DNA of 64,000 nt, taken from assembly GCF_004010195.1 (NCBI RefSeq), contig NC_057721.1:49778857-49842856 (forward strand), written 5' to 3'. The first letter of the stretch is position 1. The number at the start of each line of letters is the position of its first letter. Of this stretch, positions 1 to 59,780 are shown in pieces. The notes below the pieces were generated by a model. The model saw nothing but the letters and a program-made list of their open reading frames with translations. It had not been told where the DNA came from and searched no databases. The DNA comes from Chiloscyllium plagiosum. Lineage: Eukaryota. The position numbers were made by a program, and so were the translations under genes.

Positions 1-236
1 TCACCTTCATCCCCTCCCCCACTCACCTATTGTAGTCTATGCTACTTTCTCCCCACCCCCACCCTCCTCTCACTTATCTCTACACCCTTCAGGCTCTCTG
101 CCTGTATTCCTGATGAATGGCTTTTGCCTGAAACGTCAATTTTACTGCTTCTCGGATGCTGCCTGAACTGCTGTGCTTTTCCAGCACCACTAATCCAGAA
201 TCTGGTTTCCAGCATCTGCAGTCATTGTTTTTACCT
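1..236 (+). mobile_element. Penelope-like element terminal repeat (family A), apparently inserted in or next to a CR1
   Basis: Pyrimidine-rich 5' part, hammerhead motif at 110-137, then ggatgctgcctgaactgctgtgcttttccagcaccactaatccagaatctggtttccagcatctgcagtcattgtttttacct, shared with 26432-26642. Confidence 0.75.
106..141 (+). ncRNA. Minimal hammerhead ribozyme motif; core intact, stems partly decayed
   Basis: attc-CTGATGA-a-tggc-tttt-gcct-GAAA-c-GTC-aatt. Confidence 0.7.
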
Positions 237-2172
237 ATTTGTCAGGTATAGACAGGATAGATCAAGTGAATCCTTAGAAGAGTATAAAGAAAGCAGGAGT
301 ATACTTAAGAGGGAAATCAGGAGGGCAAAAGGGGGACATGAGATAGCTTTGGCAAATAAAATTAAGGAGAATGCAAAGGGTTTTTACAAATACATTAAGG
401 ACAAAAGGGTAACGAGGGAGAGTATAGGGCCCCTCGAAGATCAGCAAGGCGGCTTTTGTGTGGAGTCACAGAAAATGGGGGAGATACTAAATGAGTATTT
501 TGCATCAGTCTTTACTGTGGAAAAGGATACGGAAGATATAGACTGTAGGGAAATAGATGGTGACATCTTGCAAAATGTCCAGATTACAGAGGAGGAAGTG
601 CTGGATGTCTTGAAATGGTTAAAAGTGGATAAATCCCCAGGACCTGATCAGGTGTACCCAAGAACTCTGTGGGAAGCTAGAGAAGTGATTGCTGGGCCTC
701 TTGCTGAGATATTTGTATCATCGATAGTCACAGATGAGGTGCTGGAAGACTGGAGGTTGGCAAACGTGGTGCCACTGTTTAAGAAGGGTGGTAAAGACAA
801 ACCAGGGACTATAGACCAGTGAGCCTGACCTGGGTGGTGGGCAAGTTGGAGGGAATCCTGAGGGACAGGATGTACATGTATTTGGAAAGGCAAGGACTGA
901 TTTGGGATAGTCAACATGGCTTTGTGCGTGGGAAATCACGTCTCACAAACTTGATTGAGTTTTTTGAAGAAGTAACAAAGAAGATTGATGAGGGCAGAGC
1001 AGTAGATGTGATCTACATGGACTTCAGTAAAGCGTTCAACAAGGTTCCCCATGGGAGACTCATTAGCAAGGTTAGATCTCATGGAATACAGGGATAACTA
1101 GCCATTTGGATACAGAACTGGCTCAAAGGAAGAAGACAGGGTGGTGGTAGAGGGTTGTTTTTCAGATTGGAGGCCTGTGACCAGTGGAGTGCCACAAGGA
1201 TCGGTGCTGGGCCCTCTACATTTTGTCATTTACATAAATGATTTGGATGCGAGCATAAGAGGTACAGTTAGTAATTTTGCAGACGACACCAAAATTGGAG
1301 GTGTAGTGGACAGCGAAGAGGTTTACCGCAGATTACAACAGAATCTGGACCAGATGGGCCAAGGGGTTGAGAAGTGACAGATGGAGTTTAATTCAGATAA
1401 ATGCGAGGTACTGCATTTTGGGAAAGCAAATCTTAGCAAACCTTACTTAATGGTAAGGTCCTAGGGAGTGTTACTGACCAAAGAGACCTTGGAGTGCAGG
1501 TTCATAGCTCCTTGAAAATGGAGTCGCAGGTAGATAGGATAGTGAAGAAGGCGTTTGGTAAGCTTTCCTTTATTGGACAGTGTATTGAGTACAGGAGTTG
1601 GGAGGTCATGTTGCGGCTGTACAGGACATTGGTTAGGCCACTGTTGGAATACTGCATGCAATTCTGGTCTCCTTCCTATCGGAAAGATGTTGTGAAACTT
1701 GAAAGGGTTCAGAAAAGATTTACAAGGATGTTGCCAGGGTTGGAGGATCTGCCAGGGGGAGGCTGAACAGGCTGGGGCTGTTTTCCCTGGAGCATCAGAG
1801 ACTGAGGGATGACCTTATAGAGGCGCATGGATAGGATAAATAGACAAACTCTTTTCCCTAGGGTCAGGGAATCCAGAACTAGAGGGCATAGGTTTAGGGT
1901 GAGAGGGGAAAGATATAAAAGAGACCTAAGGGGCAACTTTTTCACACAGAGGGTGGTACATGTATGGAATGAGCTGCCAGAGGATGTGGTGGAGGCTGGT
2001 ACAATTGCAACATTTAAGAGGCATTTGGATGGGTATATGAATAGGAAGGGTTTGGAGGGATATAGTCTGGGTGCTGTCAGGTGGGACTAGATTAGGTTGG
2101 GATATCTGGTCGGCATGGACGGGTTGGACCGAAGGGTCAGTTTTCATGCTGTACATCTCTTTGACTCTATGA
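237..2172 (+). mobile_element. CR1-clade LINE (HER1-like), ORF2 RT region to 3' tail; frameshifted
   Basis: [62 protein letters not shown]; tail ctctttgactctatgact. Confidence 0.95.
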
Positions 2173-3799
2173 CTTTATCTCAATTGTTCACATCAGTTTG
2201 TTGTAACCATATGGCTGTTTAATTAGTCAGCCCACAATGGTAACTATCATTCCAATGCATGTACTAAGAACTTCAACTATAGGGAGGTTGTCTAGCTGTT
2301 GATCCAAGGCAGCAGAATTAACTAAATGTTTTCAAAAGTGTGTGGTTGAGTCTGATCACTGATAGAGGTGCAATGTTATGTCCGAGAATTTGTTTTCTTG
2401 GAAACTGATGGCATATGTGAACGCAACACAGGAACGGCACCTTGAGCCTTGGCAACAGCTCCTGTGTCTGGGCAATGGGTGCAGCTCCATCCACATAGAG
2501 AAATTCTCAGATTGTCACATACTGCATATTTGACTTTGTTTTCAATCTTGATAGATTCAGGAAGTTTCCATCTCATAGGTTTGGATCAGGCAGTAGAACA
2601 GTGAGGGTAGAAAAATAGCAGGGACTACAACATAGCCCTAATTCATTCCATTCTTGATCACAAATCTGTCAGGAGGAAGAGCTAGATAAATGTTGCTGTT
2701 CAGGTTACCAGGGAAGGACCAGCAATTTTCTCTAATATCCAGTTGACCCCTGACCAATTCACGGTGAGATTGATAAAATCAAAATTAAGTGGTCTTTGTT
2801 GTTCTGTTTCTGCCTCTTGAAGCTGACCGAGGTGGTTAAGACTGCTATGGATCTACCTACTCTGGAAACATATTATGCATCAAGTATAATCTCATGGCAA
2901 ATCATTACAGCTTTCTTAGCACAACGTTAGCCAATACTTTTCTGGTGATGCTGAGGAGTGAGATGCTGTGGTAGTTACTCGAATCTCTTCAATTGCCTTT
3001 GTTCTTGTGTAACCAAATGCTTGTGTCACACACATGGTGTGGGTACAGCTTTTTCTCCAGCAGCAGAGGAGGAGGAGATATAGCAGCAGAGAAGCTTTTC
3101 ATATTTGAGCAGCTCAACTGGTAGGCCATCTTTTTCAGAAATGTCCTTTCTGCAATGGGGTCAGTAGCCTGTTTGACAGTCGCATCTAATCCCGCAAACT
3201 TCTCTGGGATAATTAGGGCTGGGCAATCAATACTGACCTATCCAGCAACACTGATATCCCATGGAAGAAGTTAAAAGGATGTAACTTGCTGACATCTGGA
3301 TGGCTATGTTGGCTGCATGAGATTGAAATGTGCTTTCAGTACAGGAGACAGGTTGTAAGTCAGGTGAGCTGCATTTTTACTAGACCGGAATAACTTCTGC
3401 ATGCTTGGTCTTAAAAACCCTGTGAGAATTTCTGACACTCGTCATCTGTTTTACATGGAATATTGAGGTGTGACAAGTCATTGTATTTGGACTTGCATAA
3501 TTTCCTTGGTTGTACCTTGCCCCTGTTAGTGATGAGTGTGTGACCAGTATCACTCTGCACTGTCATAGATATGTAGTTGTGTGGAATGCTGGACAGATCT
3601 CACTGTCTGGTGTTTATCAGGTCAGCTTCATGCCAGTACCCAGAGCCTGTGCTGATCTTGGCCCTGGAAAAAAGTATTAGGAACTCACAGACCACACTGT
3701 GCACAACATTTTGATTGTTGCTGTCTATTTTTTTTTATTTTACCAATACCATGATGACTGACACATATTTGACAAAAAAAAATCCCCTGATCTAACTCC

Positions 3800-6532: not shown

Positions 6533-6574
6533 GTAAGTACTATACGGCTTTAAGAAATTAGCCATGATTATCCA

Positions 6575-16880: not shown

Positions 16881-17401
16881 AATCTTTTGATTCTTTAGCC
16901 CTAGGGCAGTTTAGTGGGAGAATCCTTCTTTGTGAAGCCCAGTGGCTTTTCCATCAGTAGACAAAACCACGCCAAAATTGATATAATTTTGAGAACAGTT
17001 AGAGTAATAAAAGGATGCTCGATAGTAAATTCATCATGAGCGAAGAAAGCATTACCGCAAGAGGATGTATTATAAATAGATGCATTTACACTGAATAGTT
17101 TAAATTCTGAAATAGACAAGATGCAAACAATATAAGCTTGACAGCTTTGAAAAGTCACGATTTCAGTTTGCATCTTAATCTTCTGTCAGAATGAGAAGGG
17201 AAACAGTTAGCTTGGTGTCATCAATAATCCCTCCTTGTGATGCACAAAAGCTGACTAGTTCATTTGTTCTGTTAGGTAATTGGACAAGCCAAATATCAGC
17301 TAACAGTATAAAATATAAATATGAAACAAGACAGACCACCAAGCCTTTAAGTGATAATAAATTAGAAATGAAGACCAGTGAAGAGGACATTTGGTTGGGC
17401 A

Positions 17402-17780
17402 CATAGAGTCAAAGAAATGCACAGCATGGAAACATACCCTTCTGTCAAACTCGTCCATGCCGACCAGATATCCCAACCCAATCTAGTCCCACATGCCAGC
17501 ACCCGGCCCATATCCCTCCAAACCCTTCCTATTCATATACCCATCCAAATGCCTCTTAAATGTTGCAATTGTACCAGCCTCCAGCCCCAGCCAGTTCAGC
17601 CTCTCCCTATAGCTCAAATCCTCCAACCCTGGCAACATCCTTGTAAATTGTTTCTGAACCCTTTCAAGTTTCACAACATCTTTCTGATAGGAAGGAGAGC
17701 AGAATTGCACACAATATTCCAACAGTGACCTAACCAATGTCCTGTACAGCCGCAACATGACCTCCCAACTTCTGTACTCA
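17402..17780 (-). mobile_element. CR1 3' end with an internal deletion
   Basis: EYRSWEVMLRLYRTLVR...RERLNWLGL joined directly to EAGTIATFKRHLDGYMNRKG. Confidence 0.9.
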
Positions 17781-17954
17781 AGCAGCTTGTCCTTGAGACT
17801 CTTCCTGCCAGGCTGATGTTGTAACTGTAAAGCTGGAAACAATAAATCTTTTCATTAAGAGCTCCATGACAGACATACATATGAACCAAGAACAGAAATA
17901 GGCCATTCAGGCTCTTGAGAGTGCTCTTCCTTTCATTAAGCTTCCATCAACAAG

Positions 17955-23379: not shown

Positions 23380-25415
23380 TAGTTCATTACTCACAGCAAA
23401 GACATTTCTCAGTAAGGAAGGAGAATTCCCAGAAAGGCAAGCCTTTGGTTAACATTACATACAAATTGAAAGAGAATCATACTATGTGGCAAATATTGTA
23501 AGTAAACAAGAGAATTGGGCAAGTTTTAAAAACCAATAAAAGATGACAAACGAGGGAGAAAATACGCTTTGAGGGTAAACTAGAAAGTAACATCAAAATG
23601 GATAGCAAGTGCTTGTTTAAATATATAAAATGAAAAAGAGAAGCCAAAATGAACATAGGCCCCATAGAGAGCGAGGTTAGGGAAATAATTATAGGGAACC
23701 AGGAAATGGCAGGGGCATTGAACAAGAAATTTATGAAGGGAGAGAGGTAGATGGCAAATTATAGGCCAGTTAGCCTGACCTTGGTCATTGGTAAAATTTT
23801 ACAATCCATTATTAAGGATGAAATTGTGAAGTGCTTGGAGGTACGTGATAAAGTAAGGCTGAGTCAGCACAGCTTCACCATGGTGAGGTTATGTCTGACA
23901 AATCTGTTAGCATTCTTTGAGGAGATAGTGAGCAAGTTAGACAAAGGAGAGTCAGTAGCCATGATCTATTTGGATTTCCAGAAGGTCTTTGACAAGGTGC
24001 CACAGAGGAGGTTGCAAAGTAAGAGCTTCTGGTGCTAAGGGCAAGTAAATGGATGGAGGATTTGCTGACGGGCAAAGGCAGAGAATGGGGATAAAGTGGT
24101 CTTTTTCAATATGGCAGCCAGTGACTAGTGGAGTTTTGCATGTCTACAACTATTCATATTAAACAAATTAACAATCTGAATGAAGGAACTGAGGGCATCT
24201 TTGGTAAGTTTGCAGATAACACAAAGATAGTTGGAGGGACAGGCAGTGGGGAGACTGAAGAAAGACTTGGACAGGCAAGGAGAGTGGGCAAAGAGGTGGC
24301 AGGTGGAATATAATGTGGTAAAATAAGACAGGTTATGCACTTTGGTAGGGTGGGAAAAGGCTTCAGAAATCTGAAGCACAAAGGAACTTAGGTGTTCTAG
24401 TTCAGGATTACTCTTAATGTAGGTTCAGTTGGCAGTTAGGAAAGCAAATGTAATGTTAACATTCATTTCCAGAGAGCTAGAATATAAGAACAGGGATATA
24501 TTGCTGAGGCTGTACTGGGGTTAGATCATACTGGATTTGGAGTATTGATAGTAATTTTGGGCCCAAAGGATGGATATGCTAGCGTTGGAGGGAGGGGGGG
24601 GGTTAAAAGAAGATGCATAGGATTATGGGGCAGCATGATGGCTCAATGGTTAGCACTGCTGCCTCACAGTGCCACAGACCCAGGTTCAGTTCCACCCTTG
24701 GGAAACGATATAGAGTTTGCATGTTCTGCCAATGTCTGTGTGGGTTTTTTTCCAGGTCCTCTGGTTTTCTCCCACAGTCCAAAGATGAGCTGGTTAGGTG
24801 GATTGGCCATGCTAAATTGCCCATAATGTTCAAGGATGTGCAGGCTAGGTAGGTTAGCAGGTAATTGCAGCATTACAGGGATGGAGTGTGTCTGGATTTG
24901 ATGCTCTTCGGAGGCTTAATACAGACTTGATGGGCCAATGGCCTGCTTTCACTCTGTAATGATCCTATGATCCTGTGGAATGAAGGGCTTGACATATGAG
25001 GAGCAGTTGAGGACTCGGTGTCTGTAATCATTGGAATTTAGAAGGATAAGAGGGTAATCTGATTGAAATCTATAGAATACTTATAGGCCTGGATACAGTC
25101 GATGTCACGATGTTTCCACTAGTAAGACACTAGGTCCCAAGAGCACATCCATGGAGTGAGGGGATGACCTTTTAGAACTGAGTTGATGAGTAATTTGTTC
25201 AGCCAGAAGGTGGTGGATCTGTGTAACTCATTGCCACAGAAGACTGTAAAAGCCAACTGAGTCTCTTTAAGACAGAAATAGATAGGTTCTTGATTAGTAA
25301 TGGGATTAAGGGCAATGGGGAGAAGGCAGGATAATGGGGTTGAGAAACACATGAGCCATGATTGAATGCCAGAGCAGACTCATTGGGCCAAATGGCGTAA
25401 TTCTGCTCCTAGGTT
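23380..25415 (+). mobile_element. CR1 LINE fragment interrupted by a SINE
   Basis: NYRPVSLT, SQHSF, CLTNLL.FFE, IYLDFQKVFDKVP, KFADNTK. Confidence 0.88.
24627..24977 (+). mobile_element. V-SINE (older copy)
   Basis: tggctcaatggttagcactgctgcctcacag head, V-domain, gatcctat tail. Confidence 0.85.
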
Positions 25416-26330: not shown

Positions 26331-26433
26331 ATTTGAGGCTGTCAGAGAAGGTTTTCTGGATGATAACTGGAATAGGCAGACTGTCTTATGAGGAAAGGCG
26401 GCACAGCTTAGGCTTATATCCACTGGAGTTGAG

Positions 26434-26642
26434 GTAAAAACAATGACTGCAGATGCTGGAAACCAGATTCTGGATTAGTGGTGCTGGAAGAGCACAGCAA
26501 TTCAGGCAGCATCCGAGGACAGGCAAAATCGACGTTTCGGGCAAAAGCCCTGATGAAGGGCTTTTGCCCGAAACGTCGATTTTGCCTGTCCTCGGATGCT
26601 GCCTGAATTGCTGTGCTCTTCCAGCACCACTAATCCAGAATC
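26434..26642. mobile_element. Penelope-like palindromic insertion (inverted terminal-repeat pair) inside a CR1 fragment
   Basis: Perfect 86-bp arms at 26466-26551 and 26557-26642, with a ~32-nt tail on the left arm. Flanked by atccactggagttgag (26418-26433) and atccactggaattgag (26640-26655). Confidence 0.85.
26550..26580 (+). ncRNA. Minimal hammerhead ribozyme motif; core and stem II intact
   Basis: CTGATGA-a-gggc-tttt-gccc-GAAA-c-GTC-gat; the 5' arm of stem I is replaced by the inverted repeat. Confidence 0.8.
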
Positions 26643-27543
26643 CACTGGAATTGAGAATAGTAAGAGGCAATTTGATTGAAACACAAAAACATTACAGGTC
26701 TTGACAGGGAAGATATGGAGGGGATATTTTTGCTTATGGGAGAATCTAGAACTAAGGCTCACTGTTTAAAATCCATGAGTTGCCCATTTAAAAATGAAAT
26801 TAGGCAAAATATTTTCTCTAAGGGTCATGAGTCTTTGGAACCCTATTCCTGAAAAGGTTGTGGAAGCACAGACTTTGAATATTTTTAAGACTAGGTAGAT
26901 TCTTGTTCAGCAACGGATTGAATGGTTTATTGGGGTTAGTTGGAATGTAGGTTTGAGGTAAATGGCTGAGTTGGATTTGACCTGCTTCTTGCTCACGGGA
27001 CATACCTGGGCAATTTCTACATCATTTGTAGGGCCAGTGTTGTAGCTGGAAGAATTTGGCCAAGGGTTTGGATACTTCTGGAATATATATCAATACTATT
27101 ACCAGGGTGTTGCAGGCCCCATATCCTTTGCAGTATCCATTGCCTTCATAAGATACATATCATGTGGAGGAGATAAAATTGGTTGAAGACACTGAGGACA
27201 TCTGGCTGAAAATGGACACTAGTTTTCAGCTTTGTCTCTTGCATTGATGTGTTTGGCTCCCCTATTGTTGAAGATGTGGATATTTTTGGAGCCTCTGCTT
27301 ACTGGTAATTGTTCGATTATCCAAAATATTCATGACAGATGTAGCAGTATTGCTGTGTTTAGATCTGATCATTTGATTGAGAGATCACTTAGCCATGTCT
27401 ATTGCATGCTGCTTCCATAGTTTGGCAGGCAAGTCATCCTGTGCTGTATTTTCACCAAGTTGACACTTCATTTTTAGGTATGCCTGGTGTTGCTTCTGGT
27501 ATGACCTTCAGCACTCTTCATTGAACAAGGATTGATTTCATGA

Positions 27544-27865: not shown

Positions 27866-28184
27866 TTAGATTAGATTAGATTCTCTACAGTTTGGAAACA
27901 GGCCCTTCGGCCCAACAAGTCCACATCGCCCCTCCGAAGAGGGACCCACCCAAACCCATTCCCCTACCCTATATTTACTGCTGACTAACACATCCATCAC
28001 TGTGGGCAATTTAGCATGGCCAATTCACCTGACCTGCGCATCTTTGGATTGTGGGAGGAAACCAGTGCACCCGGAGGAAACCCACACAGACACAGGGAGA
28101 ATGTGCAAACTCCACACAGACAGGCAGGATCGAACCCAGGTGTTGTGAGGCAGCAGTGCTAATCACTGAGACACTGTGCTGCCC
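27866..28184 (-). mobile_element. HE1/V-SINE
   Basis: (ttaga)n tail at 27866, V-domain, head ending gtgctgccc. Confidence 0.88.
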
Positions 28185-29420: not shown

Positions 29421-30098
29421 GACACTACAGGTGACCCCGCTGCACTACACACACACACAAACTCCTACAGATCCAGACACTCATGCAGATCCTCTCTCAT
29501 ACACTCACACATACATATCCCCCCCACCTCCCACCCTCTCACAGACTTGTACCCGTTTACACTCACACACTTTCTCAGACACTCACAACCACCCCTCCCC
29601 ACCCACATTTAAGTTTGTAGGGTGAATTTGTACTTGCAGAATTACATTTTATTTTGCTCAAAACTGAATCCATATAAGATTCTGTAAATCCTTGTTTTTA
29701 GAAATAGAATCAGTCTGAACATTGGGACACAGACTTTAACCTCACAACGTCAATGCATTGTTTGAGCTGACATAGCACCTATTGTTAAAGTTCACTTGAG
29801 AATGTAACTTTAAAAGAAAAGTTCTGGGATTTACATATGAAAGAACAGAAACCAACATGGTCATTCTAAAAGATAAAGAGACTTATACAATCCAGGTCTT
29901 TTTCAATATATCATCTCAGTTGCTTCACACTGTAAACATTTGCTATAAATTCTATGTCTTACGATCTTATGCTCCACAGCCACCTGATGAAGGAGCAGCA
30001 CTCCGAAAGCTAGTACTTCCAAATAAACCTGTTGGACTAACCTGGCGTTGTGTGATTTTTAACTTTGTACACCCCAGTCCAACACCGGCACCCCCAAT
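29421..30098 (+). mobile_element. Non-coding Penelope-like/retrozyme-like insertion (family B) with CA-rich 5' part, hammerhead and poly(A) signal
   Basis: 11-bp TSD cagaaataagt at 29410-29420 and 30099-30109; hammerhead at 29981-30015. Confidence 0.75.
29981..30015 (+). ncRNA. Minimal hammerhead ribozyme motif (family B)
   Basis: cac-CTGATGA-a-ggag-cagca-ctcc-GAAA-g-CTA-gta; AGCT palindrome in place of ACGT; AATAAA at 30022-30027. Confidence 0.8.
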
Positions 30099-33000
30099 CA
30101 GAAATAAGTAAGTTTCCCATCAATATTTAAGTCATATTTTTAATGAATCAAGACGCCATTACAAAAATGAATACAAAATGATTAGATAAAATGACCACAT
30201 TACAATACAAAAAAATCTAGCTGCAATGGAAATCTTTCATGGCAGTTATCGAAGACAGCTTTAACTGCAATTACTCACTACACAATGGAACAGATTTTGA
30301 AAAGGGAAGTTAAAAACCAAAGAGTACCTTAATGCAGACAAAAGCAATATTGTTAAATTTTGCATTTCTAATACAATTGAGCAGTTCATCATGAATACCT
30401 ATCGCTGTGTATCCGGTTTCATAATAAATTAGAAAAATAGGCTCTTGTTTGAATAGATATTTTTAAATTAAAGGGGTAGGGAATAAATTAACATCTTAAA
30501 GCTCAAATATTTATCGCATGTACAGCAGACCAGACTAGTAGCCATTTAACATGACCTTAAAATCAGGCAGCATCATGTAAAATCAGAAATATTTGCAATA
30601 ATCTAAATCAGTCTTTTCTTTAAAAAAATTTTAAAATTTCAAAGAATGTTGTTGTCACATCTTGATTGGGAAGGATGGAAAATGGTCTTCAGTTATAGAT
30701 GTTACCAGCTAATTTAGACCAGTTTGTTTTGCTGGCTCCTGAGTTGAAACATCCAATACAGCTTCCTAGTTCCAGTTCAAACTTTCACCTATATGCTGGG
30801 TGATTATTTATCTATATTTGATGAACCTGTTTTCTAAATAAAGCATGTTTACAGTACCTATGTTAGGGAAGCAAGATCATCCCTAACAGTGAGATATTTA
30901 GTTAATTGACCAGAGGAAAACATAGTTAGGAATCTAAATAACAATGAGCAGAAAAAGTAAAACCTGTAAAATCCGAATTACAGATTCTTAGTTTGACAAC
31001 TAATTTAGATGACTAAATGTACTATTTTCATTGCTATCCAATGAGGTACTGAATTTTAAATTAATCTCTGCAACTACATAGTGATATAGTTAATAACTAC
31101 TAAATGTTTTAAGTGTTGGAAGAAATGAGCTATTTCTGATGCCTCAAAAAAAAAAGACAATTCAATTGCTTCATAGTTGACATCAAATCCAAATACTGTT
31201 GTTGGTTCAGGCATTGTTCAATATGTTCAACCCCTTAAAGATTAAGTAATTTCCCAGAAATTCACAACAAAATTTGTCAAAAATACTTTTCTAAAGTCAT
31301 CAGTAGTACACTAAAGGCCCCTTAATCATCAAGATTTGACTTAGTGACTTCCAGTTAAATGTATACAAATGTGTTAGAAAATTGAATATACAATTTAAAA
31401 ATATACAACTGAAAAGATTTACATTGTGTACCCATGTAATTCACGAACGAAGAAAACCTAAGACTAAACACGGCATAATATGTAGGACCAGAAATAAACA
31501 AAAACACCAAAAAAAATCAAGTTACTAAATTTGTCAAAGTGTAAAATTTAATATCCTGACAGTTAGTTCTTACAGTGTTCCAAAGGTTACTCTTCGAACT
31601 TCTGAGTTTATCATGAGCCAGAAATGATACTGTACATTGTACGTTCATAAAATTATACCAGTACACAGCAATATACAAATCAATGCTTAACAATAATGCC
31701 TTACTGTTGCAATGTGTCAGTAGAAAATTACAATGATATATGTATTCACACCAGTTTATCCTCAAAAATATTCACACAGCATAATGTTGCATTCCTGTCT
31801 TCCAACCATAAAGGCTAGAACCATGTTAAATTTTCCATTACCACTCTTTAAAAGGATTATGCCACTTGGTGTATAAAAACATTCACAGTAAAATGTCACA
31901 CAGTTAGCTGTTGATTGAACTGAAACTGGTGGATTAGTAATAAAAACATACCAACCTGTGATGTAACAATTCTGAATCCCATTGAGTCAGGATTAAAATA
32001 TATGCATGGGCCTTGTTTATTTAAATGTGGTAAAATGGTTATGTAAAATTGTTCCTAATTTTGCATTTTTCATATTCACACAACATTTATTAATACTTCT
32101 GAAATTTCTTCGTAACCATTTTAAATGGAGGTGAATTGACCAAATAAAATATATAACGGTCACAATAGCTAACTAAATTTACTAGTCTTTCCTGTTATTC
32201 TTGAATCTAGACTATGGTGATTAACTGCCTATTTGCAAACTTTCTACTAGTCAACTGAAACTGATGTACATCTAGAGGCACCAAAGGGGAAAATCAATGG
32301 TAAAGGCAATTTGCTTTTTCATATTCATATACATTAGGTCTCTTTGTGCAACATTTCTAATTTTACCATCAACTTTTACCTTGGTAATAACTTTTTTTCT
32401 TAGAAATTAGTTAAAGTTGCTAGTTGCCAAAGTTGTACACTAGACCTTTTAAACAAGTTTTAATCGTTCTGTAAATTACTGATCAGTGGTTCATTTTAAC
32501 ATTATGCACCCTGCCAGAATTATTCCATTTGGATTATTTTAAAATTTCTGGTAATAACAAGAAAACTTGAGGAACTACACTTATTTTTCCTATTTAATAA
32601 AACCAATTCTCTTGAACATTACTTCACAAAAACAGTGAAGATATCCTACATTTGGATGGAAAAGTATTTAGATTAGTGCTATAGAACAAATATTGAAGAT
32701 AATTGATATAATCAAATTATTCAAAGAGAAAGCATTTTTATATCATAACATATATTCATTGGGGCAGACATTCCCAGATGATGAGGAAACAAGGGAAACT
32801 AATGTTCTGGACAAACAGAATTGTTGATATACCCAAGTGTCAACACACACAGGAATAAATAGCAAGATAGACAGTTAACAAAATAGGAGATTGGAATAAC
32901 TTATCAAGACCTTAAAATCAAAGATTAAAATCTAGGCGAGCTCATTTTCAGTTCAAATAATAAGCTATTACTTAATGGCAATTAAGGAGAACCCCACGTG

Positions 33001-47383: not shown

Positions 47384-47682
47384 TCATTGGGCCTTGGTGG
47401 TGTTGGTGGCCCCACCTGCTGAGGTCACAGTGAATGAAGAGTTCTGGCTGGAATCAGTTGACATAGAGGCCATCTGGAGACTCGCTGCATGTCCAGTTGT
47501 CCCGGCAGCAGATATCAGGCTTACGGCTGGGTTGCTGGTGAGTAAGGAGAGGTTTTGTGGGTTCAAAAAGAGAGGGGCTGTCACGATGTTTGGAGTACCC
47601 CCTGGGTTCGCTGCATTGGCAAACAATAGATTTCCACTGGCATCAAGGGAGGTTATAGGAAGTGTTCCACTAGATGCAAGCG
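47384..47682 (-). CDS. POU2F1: POU2F1 (Oct-1) terminal coding exon
   Basis: tttcttctcag acceptor; (A)[55 protein letters not shown]...TKAQ-stop. Matches the Oct-1 C-terminus ([22 protein letters not shown]...KAQ). 299 nt, phase consistent with the preceding exon. Confidence 0.97.
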
Positions 47683-48604
47683 CTGAGAAGAAATGACAAG
47701 AGATCCCTGGTTAGAATAAATGCATTTTGTGAAGCTCTTCATACCATCTGTACATCAAAAAGGGAAATAGAATGGAAAAATGACAGTTTGTGTTATCATA
47801 TATATTAAAATTATTGATAACAATGCCAAAGGCTCATAAAAATGCATTTTCAGATTGCTGTATGTATATATGTGTGATGAAATTAACTTTAGAAAAGTTT
47901 ACAAATTGTAGACTCCATCCAAATAACACAGTAACCCAATTCTTTCCAAACTCAATTCAAATAATCAATGAGCAAATTCCAGAATCATAAAATACTGGTA
48001 CACAATCATTTTGTATTGTAGTTTGAATAAGTGAGTTAAGTTTTCTTTAAAGGAAATAATTAATCAGGGACATGTTAATATCCAACATGCTTGAAGTCAA
48101 AAGGTTTTTCTTTAATTGTTTAATTTCAGATTACTACATTCATGTATAATACCTGATCAATTCATTACCAGATTAGCTACAAGTAGTCTAATGAAGTTAA
48201 TACAGGCAGTTAAAAATACATTTGCACTAACAAATATTGCAAATTTCAGTTTACAAAAATAAATCACTTAAACGTTATGTCATAACATGTTTTGCCTCTG
48301 TATCAATTTCTCTTGCCAACTATGGTTTAACGCAATTTAAAACCATAGCCTATGGTTTTACTATAAACATACTTAGCTTTTGTGAGCTCATATCATTTAC
48401 TGCCTGATGTACCTCATTGATTTAATTTTCCAAATCTTTACATTTCAATAAAATGTTGAGGCTGTCTATATCTCTTTCAGGTAGATGTTATGTATTTATC
48501 CGATTTTTCTAAATGGGAACTACAGAATCAGGCCTTTTCTGAAATTAAAACTAAAGTCCAGTAAGTACTCATTGGGTCAGACACTATCGCTTGAGAGAAA
48601 AAAA

Positions 48605-48639
48605 AGTTAATGTTTCAAGTCAATGATCTTTTGTCAGAA
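48605..48639 (-). ncRNA. Decayed hammerhead motif (older family C)
   Basis: Minus strand tt-CTGACAA-aagatcattgactt-GAAA-catt-aact. Confidence 0.45.
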
Positions 48640-49099
48640 CGGAGAAAAGAACTAAAAGGTTTTAAGCAAGTACAGATGTGGCAACATTACCGGCACCGAA
48701 GAAAAGCAAAGGTCTGGGGGTGGGGGCAAAAGAGATAAAAAGATAAGGTAAAAGGGATGGTGATGGGACAAGAAAAGTAACAAAGGATGAATCAAGAGGA
48801 AGCATAACTAAGGCAGATAGCAGCAGCATCAACAACTGCTGTTAAAACAAGCACAGATCATGAAACTGTTCCACTCCATGTTGTGTCCAGAAGGATGCAA
48901 AATTCTTAACTGGACATTGTAGAGATATTTCTCAAGAAATAAAATCCCAAGTGACAAAAAAGTTGGAATTACACTTGTGGAGTACGCACAGGTGCCGGCA
49001 GGCTTCCCACCCCCCACAAAACTTTGTCAAAGATTTAATAAAATTTCCCAGTTCAGGGCAAGAGCAGGAAACGAAACCATGAAGTCATCAACATAATAG

Positions 49100-51252
49100 A
49101 ATTAAGAGGGATAAGAAATGAAAGGCCAATTTTCACAGTATTAGGCAAGAACTTTCAAAAGCTGATTGGGGGCAGATATTTGCAGGTAAAGGGATGGCTG
49201 GAAAATGGGAAGCCTTCAGAAATGAGAACGAGAATCCAGAGAAAGTATATTCCTTTTACGATGAAAGGAAAGGCTGGTAGATATAGGGAATGCTGGATGA
49301 CTAAAAAAATTGAGGGTTTGGCTAAGAAAAAGAAGCAAGCATACGTAAAGGTATAGACAGGATAGATCGAGTGAATCCTTAGAGTGTAAAGGCAGTGGGG
49401 GTATATTTAAGAGGGAAATCAGGAGGGCAAAAAGGGGACATGAGATAGCTTTGGCAAATAGAATTAAGGAGAATCCAAAGTGTTTTTACAAATACATTAA
49501 GGACAAAAGGGTAACATGGACAGAATAGGACCCCTCAAAAGATCAGCAAGGCAGCCTTTGTGTGGAGCCACAGAAAATGGGGGAGATACTAAACGAGTAT
49601 TTTGCATCAGTATTTACTGTGGAAGGTATAGACTGTAGGGAAATAGATGGTGACATCTTGCAAAATGTCCATATTATAGAGGAGAAAGTGCTGGATGTCT
49701 TGAAACACGTAAAGGTGGATAAATCCCCAGAACCTGATCAGGTGTACCCTAGAACTCTATGGGAAGCTAGAGAAGTGACTCCCGAGTCTCTTGCTGAGAT
49801 ATTTGTATCATCGATAGTCACAGGTGAGGTGTCGGAAGACTGGAGGTAGGCTAATGTGGTGCCACTGTTTAAGAAGGATGGTAAGGACAAGCCAGGGAAC
49901 TATAGACCAGTGAGCCTGACCTCGGTGGTGGGCAAGTTGTTGGAGGGAATCCTAAGGGACAGGATGGAAATGTATTTGGAAAGGCAAGGACTGATTAGGG
50001 ATAGTCAACATGGCTTTGTGTGTTGAAAATCATGTCTCACAAACTTGATTCAGTTTTTTTAAGAAGTAACAAAGAGGAATGATGAGGGCAGAGCAGTAGA
50101 TGTGATCTATATGGACTTCAGTAAGGCGTTCAACAAGGTTCCCATGGGAGACTGATTAGCAAGGTTAGAACTCATGGAATATAGGGAGAATTAGCCATTT
50201 GGATACAAAACTGGCACAAAGGTAGAAGACAGAGGGTGGTGGTGGAGGATTATTTTTCAGACTGGAGGCCTGTGACCAGTGGAGTGCCACAAGGATCGGT
50301 GCTGGGTCCTCTACTTTTAGTCATTGAACATAAATGATTTGGATGTGAGCGTAACATGTACAGTTAGTAAGTTTGCAGAAGACACCAAAATTGGAGGTGT
50401 AATGGACAGCGAAGAGGTTTACCTCAGATTACAACAGGATCTTGACCAGATGGGCCAATGGGCTGAGAAGTGGAAGATGGAATTTAATTCAGATAAATGC
50501 GAGGTGCTGCATTTTGGGAAAGCAAATCTTAGCAGGACTTAGACACTTAATGGTAAGATCCTAGGGAATGTTGCTGAACAAAGAAACGTTGGAGTGCAGG
50601 TTCACAGCTCGTTGAAAGTGGCGTTGCAGGTGGATAGAATAGTGAAAAAAGCATTTGGTATGCTTTCTTTTGGGAGGTCATGTTGCGGCTGTACAGGACA
50701 TTGGTTAGGCCACTATTGGAATATTGCGTGCAATTCTGGTCTCCTTCCTATCGAAAACATGTTGTGAAACTTGAAAGGGTTCAGGAAGGATTTACAAGAA
50801 TGTTGCCAGGGTTGGAGGATTTGAGCTATAGGGAGAGGCTGAACAGGCTGGGGCTGTTTTCCCTCGAGCGTCAAAGGCTGAGGGGTGACCTTATAGAGGT
50901 TTACAAAATTATAAGCTGCATGGATAGGGTAAATAGACAAAAGTCTTTTCCCTGGGGTCGGGCAGTCCAGAACTAGAGGGCATACGTTTAGGGTGAGAGG
51001 GGAAAGATATAAAAGAGACCTAAGGGGCAACTTTTTCACACAGAGGGTGGTACGTGTATGAAATGAGCTGCCAGAGGAAGTGGTGGAGGCTGGTACAATT
51101 GCAACATTTAAGAGGCATTTGGATGGGTATATGAATAGGAAGGGTTTGGAGGGATATGGGCCGGGTGCTAGTCGTTGGGATGGGATATCTGATCAGCATG
51201 GATGGGTTTGACCGAAGGGTCTGTTTCCATGTTGTATATCTCTATGACTCTA
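49100..51252 (+). mobile_element. CR1 LINE (same young family as 237-2172), antisense in the last POU2F1 intron
   Basis: MGEILNEYFASVFTVE, KFAEDTK, LVRPLLEYCVQFWSP; tail tctctatgactct. Confidence 0.95.
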
Positions 51253-52480: not shown

Positions 52481-52572
52481 TGCTGAAAATGTGTTGCTGG
52501 AAAAGCGCAGCAGGTCAGGCAGCATCCAAGGAGCAGGAGAATCGACATTTTGGGCATGAGCCCTTCTTCAGG
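52481..52572 (-). mobile_element. Penelope-like terminal-repeat fragment
   Basis: Reverse complement is homologous to 52933-53010 (ggatgctgcctgacctgctgcgct...ccagca). Confidence 0.75.
52540..52572 (-). ncRNA. Decayed hammerhead motif (CpG-type transitions in the core)
   Basis: Minus strand CTGAAGA-a-gggc-tcat-gccc-AAAA-t-GTC-gatt; GAAA changed to AAAA, so presumably inactive. Confidence 0.65.
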
Positions 52573-52932
52573 AGAGAACATGGAGAGAACTGACACCCAT
52601 GGTGACAAGGTGATTGTTAGGGCCAGGGATTTTAAATTGGTGGAAGGCATTAGATGAGTCGTAGATACAGTGTAAGTGACACTCTTTGAAATAACGGCTT
52701 GATGTTCAGGGGCCCAGTGACGTGCCTGAGAGTTGGGTGTTCAATCTCTTCCAGACACCTTTGAAATTCCTTGCTACAGAGAGCTGCCAGGACAGAATCA
52801 GTGTGTATACTTAAGACGGAGATAGATTCTTGACCAGTAGGGGAACTAAGGGGACGGGGTAAGGGCAAGAAAGTGCATGTGAGGAATATCATATCAGACA
52901 TGATTCTATTGAATGGCAGAGGAGGACAGAGG

Positions 52933-53059
52933 CCTGAAGAAGGGCCTGTGCCCGAAACGTCGAATCTCCTGTTCCCTGGATGCTGCCTGACCTGCTGCGC
53001 TGTTCCAGCAATAAAGTTTCAACTTTGATCTCCAGCATCTGCAGACCTCACTTTCTCCT
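52933..53059 (+). mobile_element. 127-bp Penelope-like terminal-repeat insertion in a CR1 3' end
   Basis: Perfect 15-bp TSD agaggaggacagagg at 52918-52932 and 53060-53074; starts at the hammerhead core; internal AATAAA near 53010. Confidence 0.85.
52934..52965 (+). ncRNA. Minimal hammerhead ribozyme motif; core and stem II intact
   Basis: CTGAAGA-a-gggc-ctgt-gccc-GAAA-c-GTC-gaat. Confidence 0.8.
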
Positions 53060-54224
53060 AGAGGAGGACAGAGGTAGTGAATGGCCTATTCGTGTTCCTA
53101 TTTCTTATAGACTTATAGAAGGTCATTTTGCCAAACTAAAGCACCAATTTGTTGGCTCGCTTCATGACAATGTTAGGTTTAAACGTGAGTGAATGGAGTG
53201 CTCTACATTCAGAGGGGACTGTTTAGAGGAAGGGAAAGAGCAGAAAATTGTGATGTCTGGTACTATGGAGCAGCTCTCCATAAAATTGTCTTGGGGGAGA
53301 ATGTAATTCTTGATGTAAGAAGTGGACTTGGAGAAAAAAGCCACCAAGGAAGAGCTTAGCTTCTGCCCAAATTCATTACAGAGGGACTGGAAGAGGTGAA
53401 GCTGGGACTGAACCATTCAGGTTCAGACAGGGTTGGATCAGAGGAGATAGACAAAACACCACAAAGATTAAGATTGGAAAAGGTGTAAGGGGAAATAAAA
53501 GCAGAATATAAATCTGGATGGGGCTGAAGGGAACGGAGATCCAGAAATTGTTCAAGTCGTTTCATAAATGGGCAAAAGAAGTCTTTTTCTCAAATCGTTT
53601 TATACATGATTAAGACAATACATTTTCTTTTAAGGGAAACACCACAAAAATGTTCCAAATGCCAACATAAACTAAGTGGCTTTGTGTGTATAGTCTATAT
53701 AAATGAACAAGATATAATTTCACACATTAGTTTGCACAAGATTAAGCACCACTGTAGATGAATAGGGTAATTTCCCTCTCTTTTCATGTCCTTGTACTCT
53801 GTCAGTTTTGTCACCAGGAAGACCACCGTACAGGAGCTAACCTGCATCCTACATGGAGGGAGAGGAGTGTCAGATTTCAAATTAAGGTTGTTATTTCTAT
53901 TTTTCCCAATTTTTATCTCAACCGTTGTAGTAAATTATAATTCAATGATTAAAGTGACTAGAGACAGACAAACATTTAGTTTCAGAGTAAGAATGTAACA
54001 AACAGTATAAAGAGTGGACATGTGGGTCTGCAAGCCTATACTGACGTTCAATAAGATTCTGGTTGACACTTGACTTCACTTCATGTCTAATGCTGAACAT
54101 ATAACACAAAATCCACAGTGGTTTAAGGTAATGGTTCACCACCAATTTCTCAAGGGCAATTTGGGATGAGCAATAAATACTGTCTTGACAGTATGCCTAC
54201 ATCTCTCAAAGAAATAAAAAAAAT

Positions 54225-55614: not shown

Positions 55615-55703
55615 CTTGAATGGTTGCCAGTGTGCTATTACTCATTAATGCTGGACCAAGAGCACCACCAAGACTCCCTGGATTCAGACTTAGTAAGGCA
55701 CCT
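55615..55703 (-). CDS. POU2F1: POU2F1 penultimate coding exon (absent from the ORF track)
   Basis: tctttgcag acceptor, AAG|gtcagt donor; 89 nt (1+87+1); [29 protein letters not shown] vs human [29 protein letters not shown]. Confidence 0.96.
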
Positions 55704-56600: not shown

Positions 56601-57844
56601 TTCACTTTGGTGAGAACTCTTAAAGGACATCGGTGAACCAGAGGAGGTTTTATAATAATTTGATAGAATCAAAATCACCATGAATCACACAATTGTCATT
56701 CATGACTAATTAATTAACTGAATTTAAATTCGTCAGCTTCCATAGTGGGATTTAAACTCATGCCTCTGAATGATTAATCCAAACATCTGGGTTACCTATC
56801 TTGTAACAAGGCTACCATGATGGTAACAATTCTTATGTTTAAAAAATAAATAGAATTATTCACTAAGTTTCAGAGCACAACTCTAAGCCAATTATCTTGG
56901 CTTCACTCCAGAAGCTAGATGGCACTTCCAAAAGTTCAACCATGCCACTGAATAAACCCAAATATGCATGCAACAACAACCGAAAAGTTACAGAAATTAG
57001 ACGTACACCAGGCACTATGGCCCTGTCCCAGATACATTTAGAAACTTGACAGCTGGAAGGTGATGGCGTCAGCTCACTTCAAGAATGGTGAAGTTTCACC
57101 TTTGATGAATCGCCTCAAATACTTCCCGCATGCCCTGAAACACCAACTATACAAGATGAAGAACAGTTTGCTCTCATATCAACATTACATAACTTCACTG
57201 AATGGGCCCAAATAAATGCAAAAACAAAATATTAAATATACTGGTGATCTGAAATAGTAGCCGAAAATTCTGGAAACACACAGCCGTTCTGATAGTACCT
57301 GTGAAGTTAATGAGACTGATTTCACATTCGTTTACCAGGTCTATCTTCTACAGATGAAGGCACATAAAATAGATTGTGAGACTGGCCCAGTCACCTCTGA
57401 CCTCATCCTGAGAACATGCTTGGTGGGCACGGAAATCAGTTACCTGGCTGCCATATTTACCTGAATAATTAAAGGTAACCTTCTTAACAAGTAACCTTGT
57501 TAAGAAGCCTATTTGACATGAATTATACAGTGCCCATGCTATAGTATGAACAGTCCAGGCAGACGGGTGGGGGTGGCCAGATCATTTTCAAAGATCTCTG
57601 TGAATGAACGCGTGAAGGAAGGGGAATACCTCTAAGATGTCATTCACTCTTTCCTCCTGCACTGAAAGCCTATAGAACCTGGCCTCCCAAACCCTCTTCT
57701 ATGTCCCTGACTCTGGGATCCCTTGTTTGCCCTAAAGACCCAGCAACTACTTTCCTATTTTTCTTCAGGCTTCTTGTAGCTACTCCCACTACTGAGTTCT
57801 GGCACTACAGGGAATGGCAGAACTGCTGGACAACCATATTGGTG

Positions 57845-58823
57845 TCCTACAGGGTTCAGTGTTGGGGCCGCAGCTGTTCATTTATATATTATTGATCTGG
57901 ATGAGGGGACTGGGGTCTGGCGAAGTTCTCCGATGATACGAAGTTAAGCAGACAAACAGGTAGTTCTGAGGAGGTGGGGAGGCTGGAGAAAGATTTAGAC
58001 AGTTTAGGAGAGTGGTCTAAGAAATGGCTGATGAAATTCAGCGTGAGCAAATGTGAGGTCTTGCACTTTGGAAAAAAGAATACAGGCATGGACTATTTTA
58101 TAAATGGTGAGAAAATTCATAGCGCCAAAGTACAAAGGGATCCGGGAGTGCTAGTCCAGGATTCTCTGAAGGTTGACTTGCAGGTTGAGTCCGCAGGTAA
58201 GAAAGCAAATGTAATGTTGTCATTTATCTCAAGAGGGTTGGAATGTAAAAGCAGCGATGTGCTACTGAGACTTTATAAAGCTCTGGTTAGGCCCCATTTA
58301 GAATACGGTGTCCAATTCTGGGCCCTACACCTCAGAAAGGGCATACTGGCACTGGAGCGTGTCTAGCAGATTCACACGGATGATCCCTGGAATGATAGGC
58401 CTAACATAAGATAAACGGCTGAGGATCCTGGGATTGTATTCATTAGAGTTCAGAAGATTGAGGGGAGATCTAATAGAAACTCACAAGATAATGCATGACT
58501 TAGAAAGCGTGGACGCTGGGAATTTGTTTCTGTTAGGCGGGGATACTAGGACCCATGGGCACAGTCTTAGAATTAGAGGGGGTCAATTTCTTCAGCTAGA
58601 GTGTGGTGGGCCTGTGGAATTCATTGTCATGAAGCGCAGTGGAGACCGAGAGCTAAATGCCTTTAAGGCAGAGATTGATAAATTCTTGATCTCCCAAGGA
58701 ATTAAGGGCTACAGGGAGAGTGTGGGTAAGTGGCGTTGAAATGCCGATTAGCCATGATTGAATGGCGGAGTGGACTCGATGGGCTGAATGGTCTTACTTC
58801 CACTCCTATGTCTTATGGTCTTA
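57845..58823 (+). mobile_element. CR1 LINE 3' part (another subfamily)
   Basis: cagggttcagtgttggggcc, KFSDDTK, LYKALVRPHLEYGVQFW; tail tcttatggtcttat. Confidence 0.92.
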
Positions 58824-58980
58824 TATTAGCGACAGTGGATCTTACTCCCAAATGGAGCAGCAGTCCCACTATTGGTTAATTTAGCCCACCTGCAATGGAT
58901 TTTCAAGGAGTGTATTGCCTTCCAGCTAAATTTTCTTCATGAGCCAAGCAGTCCATGCACCCTGTTTGTAAAATTCTGCC

Positions 58981-59780
58981 CAACATTTCAGGTCTGTTAT
59001 CTTTCATCAAAACGGAGTGAAGTTACAAACACAATAACATTTTAGAAAGCTTAATATGTTGGAAGAATAACAAACAGTGAAATCTAGGAGTGGGTGGAGG
59101 GAAGGAAAAATTAAATGACAGAATATTTCAGAGTAGAAAAACAAAGGGAATGGCAACGATACAAGTAAACATATCAAAGATGTGCACAGGGGAACGTAAA
59201 TGCCAAAGTAGCAACCAAAAGCAAATTAGCAGAATTGAAAACAAAAGAGAAAAATTAGAAAAAAAGATACAAAACTAAATGGAGGTAGAGGTTATGATCT
59301 GACTGTAAAATGTCTAGTTGAAAGATGAGTTACTGTTCCTCAAATTTGGATCGAGATTCATTCAAACATTGCAGTAAGCCAACAATGGAAAAGCTCAACA
59401 TGTAACTGAGGTAAAGAAATAAAATGACAGGCAACAGGAAGCTCAGGGTCATGCATGCATACTGAATGCAAGTGTTCTATAATTGCCCAGTCTGCTCTTG
59501 GTCTTCTGAAAGTGGATGGCACGAATTCTCCCATTGTCATTGTTAGGGCCCTGAACCATGTACATCCTATTTCATGTCCCTCTCTGAGAAACATAATTGG
59601 AGTTCTCAAGGCCTCACTTTTCAGTCTTTTATCCTTCGTCCTAACTTCCTTTTTTGTTTGCTTAAGCACTTCTAACTTTTCTCAATTCTGGTTAAAGGTC
59701 ACAGACTTGAAATGTTGACTCCCTCTCTTGACATAACTGCTGCAAGATCTGCAGAGTGTTTCCAATATTCTGTTTTAACT
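58981..59780. mobile_element. Old Penelope-like element relic with a GIY-YIG endonuclease remnant and oppositely oriented terminal repeats
   Basis: Minus strand ~59350-59505 reads (frameshifted) TKSRLG...EHLHSVCMHDPELPVACHF, resembling Penelope GETKRRL..RF.EH...PVA.HF. Plus strand reads IVRALNHVHPIS. Decayed hammerheads at 58981-59011 (-) and 59684-59720 (+). Confidence 0.65.

What the first reader, a model, noticed from the sequence alone, without database searches (positions are those of the whole stretch)
106..59720. Dense population of minimal, probably dimeric hammerhead ribozymes carried by three Penelope-like families
Seen: eight motifs of the form CTGANGA-A-[stem II]-GAAA-N-NTH, at 110(+), 26550(+), 29984(+), 48605(-), 52540(-), 52934(+), 58981(-) and 59688(+). 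Four keep every catalytic-core nucleotide. Stem II covaries between families (GGGC/GCCC with loops TTTT, CTGT, TCAT; GGAG/CTCC; AGGTC/GACTT). Helix III is replaced by a 4-nt palindrome that also covaries (ACGT vs AGCT). Short stem I pairing is family-specific (ATTC/GAAT across two related copies; AC/GT). Established: Penelope-like elements carry minimal type I hammerheads in their terminal repeats, thought to cleave as dimers through a palindromic helix III. Inference: about one motif per 8 kb here, so if this window is typical a shark genome holds on the order of 10^5 per Gb, which standard annotation would miss. I cannot tell whether these specific families are already catalogued.
Basis: partly seen in the sequence, partly recalled or inferred. 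Interest (0 to 1): 0.9.

Follow-up and report, generated by a model that had tools for sequence, protein, structure and literature searches.

The report
Penelope-type hammerhead relics in shark DNA
Short dead copies of Penelope-like jumping genes, each carrying a tiny hammerhead ribozyme motif, are scattered through this stretch of shark-type DNA; the kind is already known from other animals, so this is a new example, not a new thing.

Summary
Four (110, 26550, 29984, 52934) keep every catalytic-core base. Three also keep an intact helix II, against 0.04 expected by chance (0 of 100 shuffles). The other four are decayed, mostly by CpG transitions. A ninth decayed copy lies near 57300(-).

They are retrotransposon relics. 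Family 1 has five arms; two insertions have solid 14-15 bp target-site duplications. It has two discrete 3' ends 33-35 nt apart and one head-to-head inverted insertion with the ribozyme at its apex. Family 2 is a 678-bp non-coding insertion with the ribozyme 114 nt from its 3' end. This anatomy matches published Penelope-like elements (PLEs): hammerhead near the 3' end, internal start of reverse transcription, a 30-40 bp "tail", and an inverted 5'-truncated copy.

No PLE reverse transcriptase or GIY-YIG gene is in the window; every RT found belongs to APE-type LINEs. The same hammerhead sequence and the same palindromic insertions occur on stony-coral contigs.

Most copies look inert. Minimal PLE hammerheads are in print since 2014, so this is a new member of a known kind. 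The density is notable but rests on one window. First readers of this scan noted the same thing on other pieces of this genome (unchecked).

The parts
109..236 (+). Family 1 copy A, long form. Hammerhead motif at 110-137, core intact, but the 10.1/11.1 pair is T/T. It is followed after 7 nt by a 5'-truncated APE-type LINE starting at 244.
26434..26641 (.). Family 1 copy B, a head-to-head inverted insertion. The left arm (minus strand) is the long form with the tail; the right arm (plus strand) is the short form. The intact hammerhead at 26550-26577 sits at the apex. The arms at 26466-26551 and 26557-26642 are 100% complementary. The insertion lies inside a LINE C-terminal region.
26420..26433 (.). 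Target-site duplication of copy B. Its partner is 26642-26655; 13 of 14 bases are identical.
52484..52573 (-). Family 1 copy C, short form, decayed (G12 to A, ACGT to ATGT). Its limits are uncertain: a possible 11-bp duplication would make it about 233 bp.
52933..53059 (+). Family 1 copy D, a 127-nt unit. The intact hammerhead is at 52934-52961. The 5' end lies one base before the core. It is flanked by a 15-bp duplication at 52918-52932 and 53060-53074.
29421..30098 (+). Family 2, a 678-bp non-coding insertion. The intact hammerhead is at 29984-30012, and the 3' end lies 114 nt after the first core base. It is flanked by an 11-bp duplication at 29410-29420 and 30099-30109.
48554..48668 (-). 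Family 3 copy a, decayed hammerhead (first core base 48637).
58930..59039 (-). Family 3 copy b, decayed hammerhead (first core base 59010).
59659..59769 (+). Family 3 copy c, decayed core but helix II fully paired. Its downstream box resembles that of family 1 (p about 0.002).
57265..57344 (-). It was found by profiles through its downstream box.

Best explanation
These are relics of retrotransposition by the machinery of Penelope-like elements (PLEs): 5'-truncated or non-autonomous copies, not ribozymes working in place.

In this element type the minimal type-I hammerhead lies about 90-125 nt upstream of the point where the PLE enzyme starts reverse transcription. Almost every insertion, however short, therefore carries one hammerhead (inferred). 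That alone explains the density.

Two alternative start sites give two 3' ends 33-35 nt apart, the 'tail'. Priming from both nicked target strands gives head-to-head inverted insertions with the ribozyme at the apex (inferred from Frangieh 2024). In the master elements the hammerhead would help to process longer-than-unit transcripts, probably as a protein-assisted or dimeric ribozyme (published hypothesis, not tested here).

The copies in this window decay neutrally, chiefly at CpG. Most cannot fold as a hammerhead in their present context.
For: Motif:
- 3 strict hits against 0.04 expected.
- All 8 copies have the bulged A after A9 and A15.1/U16.1.
- Of 68 pair cells, 80.9% pair, against 19-47% when the partner columns are slid.
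- 3 of 4 helix II pairs change on both sides between families.

Repeat families:
- Five family-1 arms share 83-92% identity.
- A profile built from family 3 alone finds all five family-1 arms, E 1.4e-4 to 0.028.
- Catalytic boxes and a box at +45 to +77 are conserved between families (0.61-0.73), whereas helix II and spacer sequence are not (0.35-0.36).

Retroposition:
- Target-site duplications are 15 bp (copy D), 13 of 14 bp (copy B) and 11 bp (family 2).
- 5' extents vary: -564, -1, 0 and +7 from the first core base.

PLE signatures:
- Two 3' ends are seen: +91 (2 arms) and +125/126 (3 arms).
- This matches the 30-40 bp tail and the two internal start sites 111-118 nt into an ORF that begins at helix II.
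- Copy B is an inverted pair with the tail on one side only, as drawn for PLEs.

Comparison outside the genome:
- The same 24 specified bases occur at 17 metagenome loci.
- The one contig tested for origin (L009, group X) is stony coral by its GPCR gene.
- Three independent palindromic insertions there have flanking duplications; L012 has 89-nt arms with 5 nt between them.
- Helix I, which was not in the search pattern, is complementary: at least 3 bp in 11 of 17 loci against 6 of 68 slid controls.

LINE link excluded:
- The unit's 3' ends match no LINE copy in the window.
- LINE homologues align only from residue 79-80, just past copy A.
Against: - No PLE RT or GIY-YIG ORF was found among 141 open frames of at least 72 aa. 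The four RVT_1 hits were not assigned to frames; the window's RT-bearing frames read as LINE, and homologues of 1-819 carry APE endonuclease domains. None was found on the 7 long ORFs of the coral contigs either.
- The tail and the 5'-end patterns rest on five arms.
- The duplication of copy C is doubtful: 11 bp, chance about 0.035 per locus over 8 loci.
- Box similarity is significant only for family-3 copy c (p 0.0014-0.0022 with 3 of the 4 box versions, 0.067 with the fourth). It is 0.03-0.12 for copy b, 0.11-0.72 for copy a and 0.11-0.71 for family 2.
- Whole-unit folds are not better than shuffles, z -0.05 to -1.93.
- The double-hammerhead fold is less stable than the predicted dimer minimum: -18.9 against -24.6, -16.3 against -17.9, and -13.7 against -17.8 kcal/mol.
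- There are no RNA data.
Confidence: 0.8

Rival explanations
1. They are monomers of non-LTR retrozymes: non-coding hammerhead repeats that spread through small circular RNAs made from tandem arrays, rather than direct truncation products of PLE insertion.
For: - The units are short and non-coding (127-678 bp).
- A 2026 preprint finds tandem retrozymes in one chondrichthyan genome and derives them from PLE pLTRs.
- Monomers are common in some families.
Against: - No tandem copy of any family is in the window.
- Unit ends are not at the predicted cleavage site, as cut-and-religated circles would suggest. They are at fixed points 91, 114 or 125 nt downstream of the first core base.
- This rival partly overlaps the best explanation, since both use PLE enzymes.
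Confidence: 0.12
2. They are SINE-like elements moved by the abundant APE-type (CR1-like) LINEs, and the hammerhead is a passenger.
For: - The window is full of such LINEs.
- Copy A abuts a 5'-truncated LINE, and copy B lies inside one.
Against: - The unit's 3' ends show no similarity to any LINE copy in the window.
- The inverted pair and the two 3' ends are PLE traits said not to occur in LINE insertion.
- The same architecture occurs on coral contigs.
Confidence: 0.05
3. They are host-adopted ribozymes that process the POU2F1 pre-mRNA or other transcripts in place.
For: Six of the nine loci lie between two POU2F1 C-terminal coding pieces, both on the minus strand.
Against: - Both orientations occur.
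- Five of nine copies have lost core bases, mostly through CpG decay.
- Copies are bounded by target-site duplications.
Confidence: 0.02

Closest known systems
Minimal hammerheads of Penelope-like elements (Cervera and de la Pena 2014, PMC4209133; parts 1-2 of the text read)
   Same: - CUGANGA and GAAA boxes.
- An unpaired base between positions 9 and 10.1.
- G10.1-C11.1 in families 1 and 2.
- A palindrome at 15.2-16.2 in place of helix III, and a short helix I.
- Mostly single dispersed motifs, with some pairs on opposite strands 100-700 bp apart.
- Several families per genome that differ by compensatory changes.
   Different: - Helix II is 4-5 bp here, against 7-8 bp in the schistosome families.
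- The host lineage (an elasmobranch) is not named in the text that I read; the supplements were not seen.
- Local density is far higher than the per-genome totals given there (about 4,000 in coelacanth, about 9,000 in Xenopus).
Poseidon PAc of Anolis (Frangieh et al. 2024, PMC11167929; parts 1-2 read)
   Same: - The hammerhead lies just upstream of the 3' end of inserted copies.
- Two internal reverse-transcription start sites bound a 30-40 bp tail.
- The start site is AC-rich.
- Both target strands are cut and extended, which would give inverted pairs.
   Different: - There the ORF starts at helix II. Here the frame from the ATG in the core stops after 17 codons (read).
- No enzyme is present in the window.
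- The duplicated target sites here are not AT-rich.
Non-LTR retrozymes (Cervera and de la Pena 2020, PMC7229834; Li, Clavereau and Pollet 2026 preprint; passages read)
   Same: Non-coding type-I hammerhead repeats tied to PLEs, with target-site duplications longer than 4 bp; present in a chondrichthyan.
   Different: Retrozymes are tandem and have canonical loops or a short helix III. These copies are dispersed single units or inverted pairs with the minimal motif.
Stony-coral minimal-hammerhead repeats (loci L001-L017 fetched here)
   Same: - Identical core, helix II (GGGC/GCCC) and ACGUC.
- Palindromic insertions with the ribozyme at the apex and 5 nt between the arms.
- Flanking duplications of 12-19 bp and two classes of 3' end.
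- A CAGCACCAC stretch downstream.
   Different: - Helix I, the loops and everything else differ in sequence.
- The two 3' ends are about 58 nt apart.
- Only the contig of L009 was assigned to a coral.
Rfam hammerhead families (names recalled, not returned by any search)
   Same: Same catalytic boxes.
   Different: No match at the gathering threshold or at E up to 10. Those models expect a helix III and a longer helix I.

Membership tests
Hammerhead ribozyme, minimal type I | Core C3 U4 G5 A6 N7 G8 A9 and G12 A13 A14 | tested here: met
   Met by 4 of 8 listed copies (110, 26550, 29984, 52934). The other 4 have 1-2 core changes.
Hammerhead ribozyme, minimal type I | Helix II closed by the 10.1-11.1 pair | tested here: met
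   89.3% of helix II cells pair. G-C at 10.1/11.1 in 4 of 8, A-U in 3, and broken in copy 110.
Hammerhead ribozyme, minimal type I | A15.1-U16.1 and a palindrome that can form helix III between two molecules; cleavage triplet NUH | tested here: met
   A/U in 8 of 8. The inner pair is C-G in 3, U-G in 3 (CpG decay), G-C in 1 and unpaired in 1. Triplets are GUC, CUA and GUU.
Hammerhead ribozyme, minimal type I | Helix I | tested here: inconclusive
   Only 62.5% of cells pair over three positions in the window copies. At the 17 coral-type loci there are at least 3 contiguous pairs in 11 of 17, against 6 of 68 slid controls.
Hammerhead ribozyme, minimal type I | Self-cleavage | not testable with these tools
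Folding predicts competing structures.
Hammerhead ribozyme, minimal type I | Match to a curated Rfam hammerhead model | tested here: not met
   No hammerhead family at E up to 10.
Penelope-like element | ORF with a telomerase-like RT and a GIY-YIG endonuclease | tested here: not met
   Among 141 open frames of at least 72 aa: RVT_1 in 4, no GIY-YIG. The four were not assigned to frames. Homologues of the RT-adjacent frame 1-819 carry APE endonuclease domains. The copies are therefore filed as PLE-derived, not as PLEs.
Penelope-like element | Hammerhead close to the 3' end of the inserted unit, with variable 5' truncation | tested here: met
   3' ends lie at +91, +114 and +125/126 from the first core base. 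5' ends run from -564 to +7.
Penelope-like element | Optional 30-40 bp tail at one end | tested here: met
   There are two 3'-end classes 33-35 nt apart. The inverted pair has the tail on one arm only (definition).
Penelope-like element | Inverted 5'-truncated copy next to the 5' end | tested here: met
   Copy B has 86-nt arms, 100% complementary, with 5 nt between them.
Penelope-like element | Partial tandem (pseudo-LTR) | tested here: not met
   No direct adjacent copies in the window.
Non-LTR retrozyme | Tandem repeats with a hammerhead in each unit | tested here: not met
   No tandem copies.
Non-LTR retrozyme | Unit-length circular RNA | not testable with these tools
   No reads could be laid.

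The most novel reading that the evidence does not exclude
Elasmobranch genomes may hold the densest population of hammerhead motifs of any vertebrate: about 50 intact and about 140 recognisable per Mb in this window. For comparison, 126,247 motifs in 28.21 Gbp of axolotl is about 4.5 per Mb.

The density would arise because PLE reverse transcription starts just 3' of the ribozyme. A recurrent 5' end at the first core base (copies B and D) would then mark a discrete RNA 5' end, that is, a ribozyme-headed, SINE-like mini-element made by run-off, rather than random truncation.
Probability: 0.3. Interest if true: 0.45.

Novelty: new member of a known kind. Interest (0 to 1): 0.27.

Why it matters
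It adds an elasmobranch to the hosts of PLE-type minimal hammerheads. It also shows in one window the whole set of PLE insertion signatures (tail, inverted pair, target-site duplications) on very short copies.

If the density holds genome-wide, ribozyme motifs would be a sizeable, unannotated part of shark repeats, since Rfam models miss them. Thousands of natural copies would then be available to map the two reverse-transcription start sites and the 5' ends of PLE templates. It does not change what is known about how these ribozymes work.

Tried and rejected
**Approaches that gave nothing**
- Rfam at the gathering threshold and at E up to 10, on the whole window and on two 161-base stretches, gave no hammerhead. 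It gave only weak miRNA-like hits to the hairpin at 26509-26600.
- The first metagenome scan, with a 29-base anchor from the downstream box, gave 0 hits.
- A protein search with the open frame across the hairpin gave 0 hits.
- A protein search with frame 1-819 gave 42 LINE-type hits. All 42 align from residue 79 onwards, so none covers the module.
- Pfam on 7 long ORFs of the metagenome loci found host genes only.

**Weak or rejected signals**
- Upstream homology between copy A, family 2 and family 3 gave only weak C-rich matches (E 0.02-0.4), not relied on.
- Long-range helices closing the hammerhead appear in single folds, but at different places and with z -1.8 to +0.85, so I do not claim them.
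- I rejected 16721 and the other hits with at most 2 mismatches as chance: no family, palindrome or box.
- The literature searches were swamped by hammerhead sharks and cartilage papers.
- Searches found no paper on dispersed PLE hammerheads in sharks. Only the 2026 preprint covers tandem retrozymes in one chondrichthyan.
- Supplements of Cervera 2014 and of the preprint (species lists) were not opened and may name a cartilaginous fish.
Full report
**What is there**

The window has no N. By its repeats it is elasmobranch DNA. A LINE-type frame at 1-819 has its best named relatives in Heterodontus, Mobula, Chiloscyllium and Pristis. Two frames on the minus strand, 63657-63998 and 47387-47710, are the likely source of two Pfam POU2F1_C matches. 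I assigned them by composition, not by a per-frame scan.

**Chance**

- The bare pattern CTGANGA-N6-30-GAAA is not significant: 11 matches against 5.8 expected.
- Requiring a helix II of at least 4 bp gives 3 hits (26550, 29984, 52934) against 0.04 expected, with 0 of 100 dinucleotide shuffles reaching 3.
- With at most one core mismatch there are 8 against 1.7. With at most two there are 36 against 23.7.
- A hit at 16721 under a looser loop limit has none of the other features.
- Profile searches add one more decayed copy at about 57265-57344(-).

This makes nine loci in 64 kb. Four have an intact core, and three of these also have an intact helix II.

**The carriers**

Family 1 has five arms:
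- Copy A: 109-236.
- The two arms of hairpin B.
- Copy C: 52573 down to 52484.
- Copy D: 52933-53059.

The solid boundaries are these:
- Copy D is a 127-nt unit bounded by a 15-bp duplication.
- Copy B is a 208-bp inverted pair bounded by a 14-bp duplication (13 of 14 identical). It lies inside a LINE C-terminal coding region.
- The 3' ends fall into two classes: +91 from the first core base (B right arm, C) and +125/126 (A, B left arm, D). They are 33-35 nt apart.
- Family 2 is a 678-bp insertion with an 11-bp duplication. A first-reader note (s1-883568) gave the lead, which I confirmed. Its hammerhead ends 114 nt... more exactly, its 3' end lies 114 nt after the first core base.
- The three family-3 copies share about 65 nt around the decayed motif.

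The three families are related:
- A profile built from family 3 alone finds all five family-1 arms, with E 1.4e-4 to 0.028.
- Between families 1 and 3 the two catalytic boxes (0.71-0.73) and a box at +45 to +77 (0.61) are conserved. Helix II and spacer sequence are not (0.35-0.36).
- The box match on its own is significant only for copy 59688 (p 0.0014-0.0022 with three of the four box versions, 0.067 with the fourth). It is weaker for the others.

Within family 1 the downstream box (0.92) is at least as conserved as the core (0.88-0.90).

**Structure counts**

On the eight motifs, 80.9% of pair cells form a standard pair, against 19-47% when the partners are slid. Three of four helix II pairs change on both sides. 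A15.1/U16.1 is kept in 8 of 8.

There are only about three independent lineages, and the structure was derived from these same sequences.

The inactivating changes are mostly CpG transitions: ACGT to ATGT or ACAT, CCCG to CCTG or CCCA. This fits neutral decay.

**Link to Penelope-like elements**

No PLE gene is in the window. Among 141 open frames of at least 72 aa, Pfam finds RVT_1 four times and no GIY-YIG. I did not map the four hits to frames. The window's RT-bearing frames read as LINE, and homologues of frame 1-819 carry APE-type endonuclease domains. The link is therefore architectural.

- Frangieh et al. 2024 (parts 1-2 read) show that a PLE enzyme starts reverse transcription at two internal sites 111-118 nt into an ORF that begins at helix II. 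The stretch between the sites is the 30-40 bp tail. Both target strands are cut and extended.
- Craig et al. 2021 (passages) list heavy 5' truncation, an inverted 5'-truncated copy at the 5' end, and a tail often at one end only.
- Family 1 shows each of these features.

A LINE-driven SINE is unlikely. The 3' ends of the unit resemble none of the LINE copies. Of the 42 LINE homologues, none aligns before residue 79, and nine begin exactly at residue 79-80, just past copy A.

**Outside evidence**

A scan of metagenome contigs for the family-1 core, helix II and ACGTC found 17 loci. Helix I was not in the pattern.

- One contig carries a class C GPCR whose best named relatives are stony corals.
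- The loci form two groups.
- Three independent loci are head-to-head palindromes with the ribozyme at the apex and flanking duplications. L012 has 89-nt arms with 5 nt between them, like the shark hairpin.
- Two classes of 3' end recur.
- Helix I is complementary, with different sequences in each group: at least 3 pairs in 11 of 17 loci against 6 of 68 slid controls.
- No PLE ORF lies on these contigs either.

**Function**

Nothing here shows cleavage.
- No listed holder of the stretch is on record as RNA.
- The predicted double-hammerhead dimer is less stable than the minimum-energy dimer.
- In the 26550 monomer, U4-G8 pairs with CGUCG.

This agrees with the low in vitro activity reported in 2014 and the protein-assisted cleavage reported in 2024.

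In context, 26550 sits in a perfect hairpin and 52934 lacks its upstream helix I strand. Only 29984 keeps native flanks.

**Known or new**

- Minimal hammerheads in PLEs, their mass occurrence, the dimer idea and opposite-strand pairs are in print.
- Tandem retrozymes in one chondrichthyan are in a 2026 preprint.
- My searches found no paper on dispersed PLE hammerheads in sharks. Supplements were not seen.
- The local density (47 strict, 140 recognisable per Mb) exceeds the axolotl figure of 126,247 in 28.21 Gbp, but it comes from one window.
- First-reader notes on other pieces of this genome report the same families: 179 of 998 notes fit the look-up. These are unchecked leads.

**Verdict**

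The motifs are real. They are correctly read as PLE-type minimal hammerheads, but they are relics rather than a working population. This is a new member of a known kind.

Noticed in passing
window 63657-63998(-) and 47387-47710(-): Two Ser/Thr/Ala-rich open frames, the likely source of the two Pfam POU2F1_C matches (best E 1.8e-35). If so, the window lies in a POU2F1 gene on the minus strand, and six of the nine hammerhead loci sit in the intron between these pieces. The 2026 preprint reports retrozymes as depleted from introns in Xenopus.
   Followed up: partly
window 237-2200(+), 17400-17850, 23750-24040, 49150-51200, 57900-58740, 59947-60312(-): Many fragments of one APE-type (CR1-like) LINE. 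The copy at 244 is 5'-truncated and joined to hammerhead copy A through 7 nt of unknown origin. This could be a chance neighbour or a template-switch chimera.
   Followed up: partly
window 26509-26600: The hairpin of copy B gives weak Rfam matches to miRNA precursor models (mir-2007 E 0.002, mir-722 E 0.008, far below gathering). If transcribed it would be a perfect 86-bp double-stranded RNA.
   Followed up: no
window 57265-57344(-): A ninth, strongly decayed member, recognisable mainly by the downstream box.
   Followed up: partly
window 154-236, 26434-26516, 52978-53059: All three long-form family-1 units are predicted to form the same three-way junction. The 5' half of the box pairs with the tail. 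The third hairpin differs in sequence between D and A/B but stays a hairpin. The short-form 3' end falls inside that hairpin. Whole-unit z-scores are not significant.
   Followed up: partly
window 186-236 and 26432-26482: Copies A and B (left arm) are 100% identical over their last 51 nt, although the copies differ by 8-11% overall. They belong to a young subfamily.
   Followed up: no
L002-L017 (group X) and window 179-187, 26619-26627: The stretch CAGCACCAC lies downstream of the hammerhead both in shark family 1 and in 8 of the 11 coral-type group X loci; L003 and L005 differ from it by one base. This is a possible shared start signal for reverse transcription. It was picked out after the fact.
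   Followed up: no
window 28073-28126: Places that read laying would not lay (a filter; no meaning attached). I left them out of all later searches.
   Followed up: no
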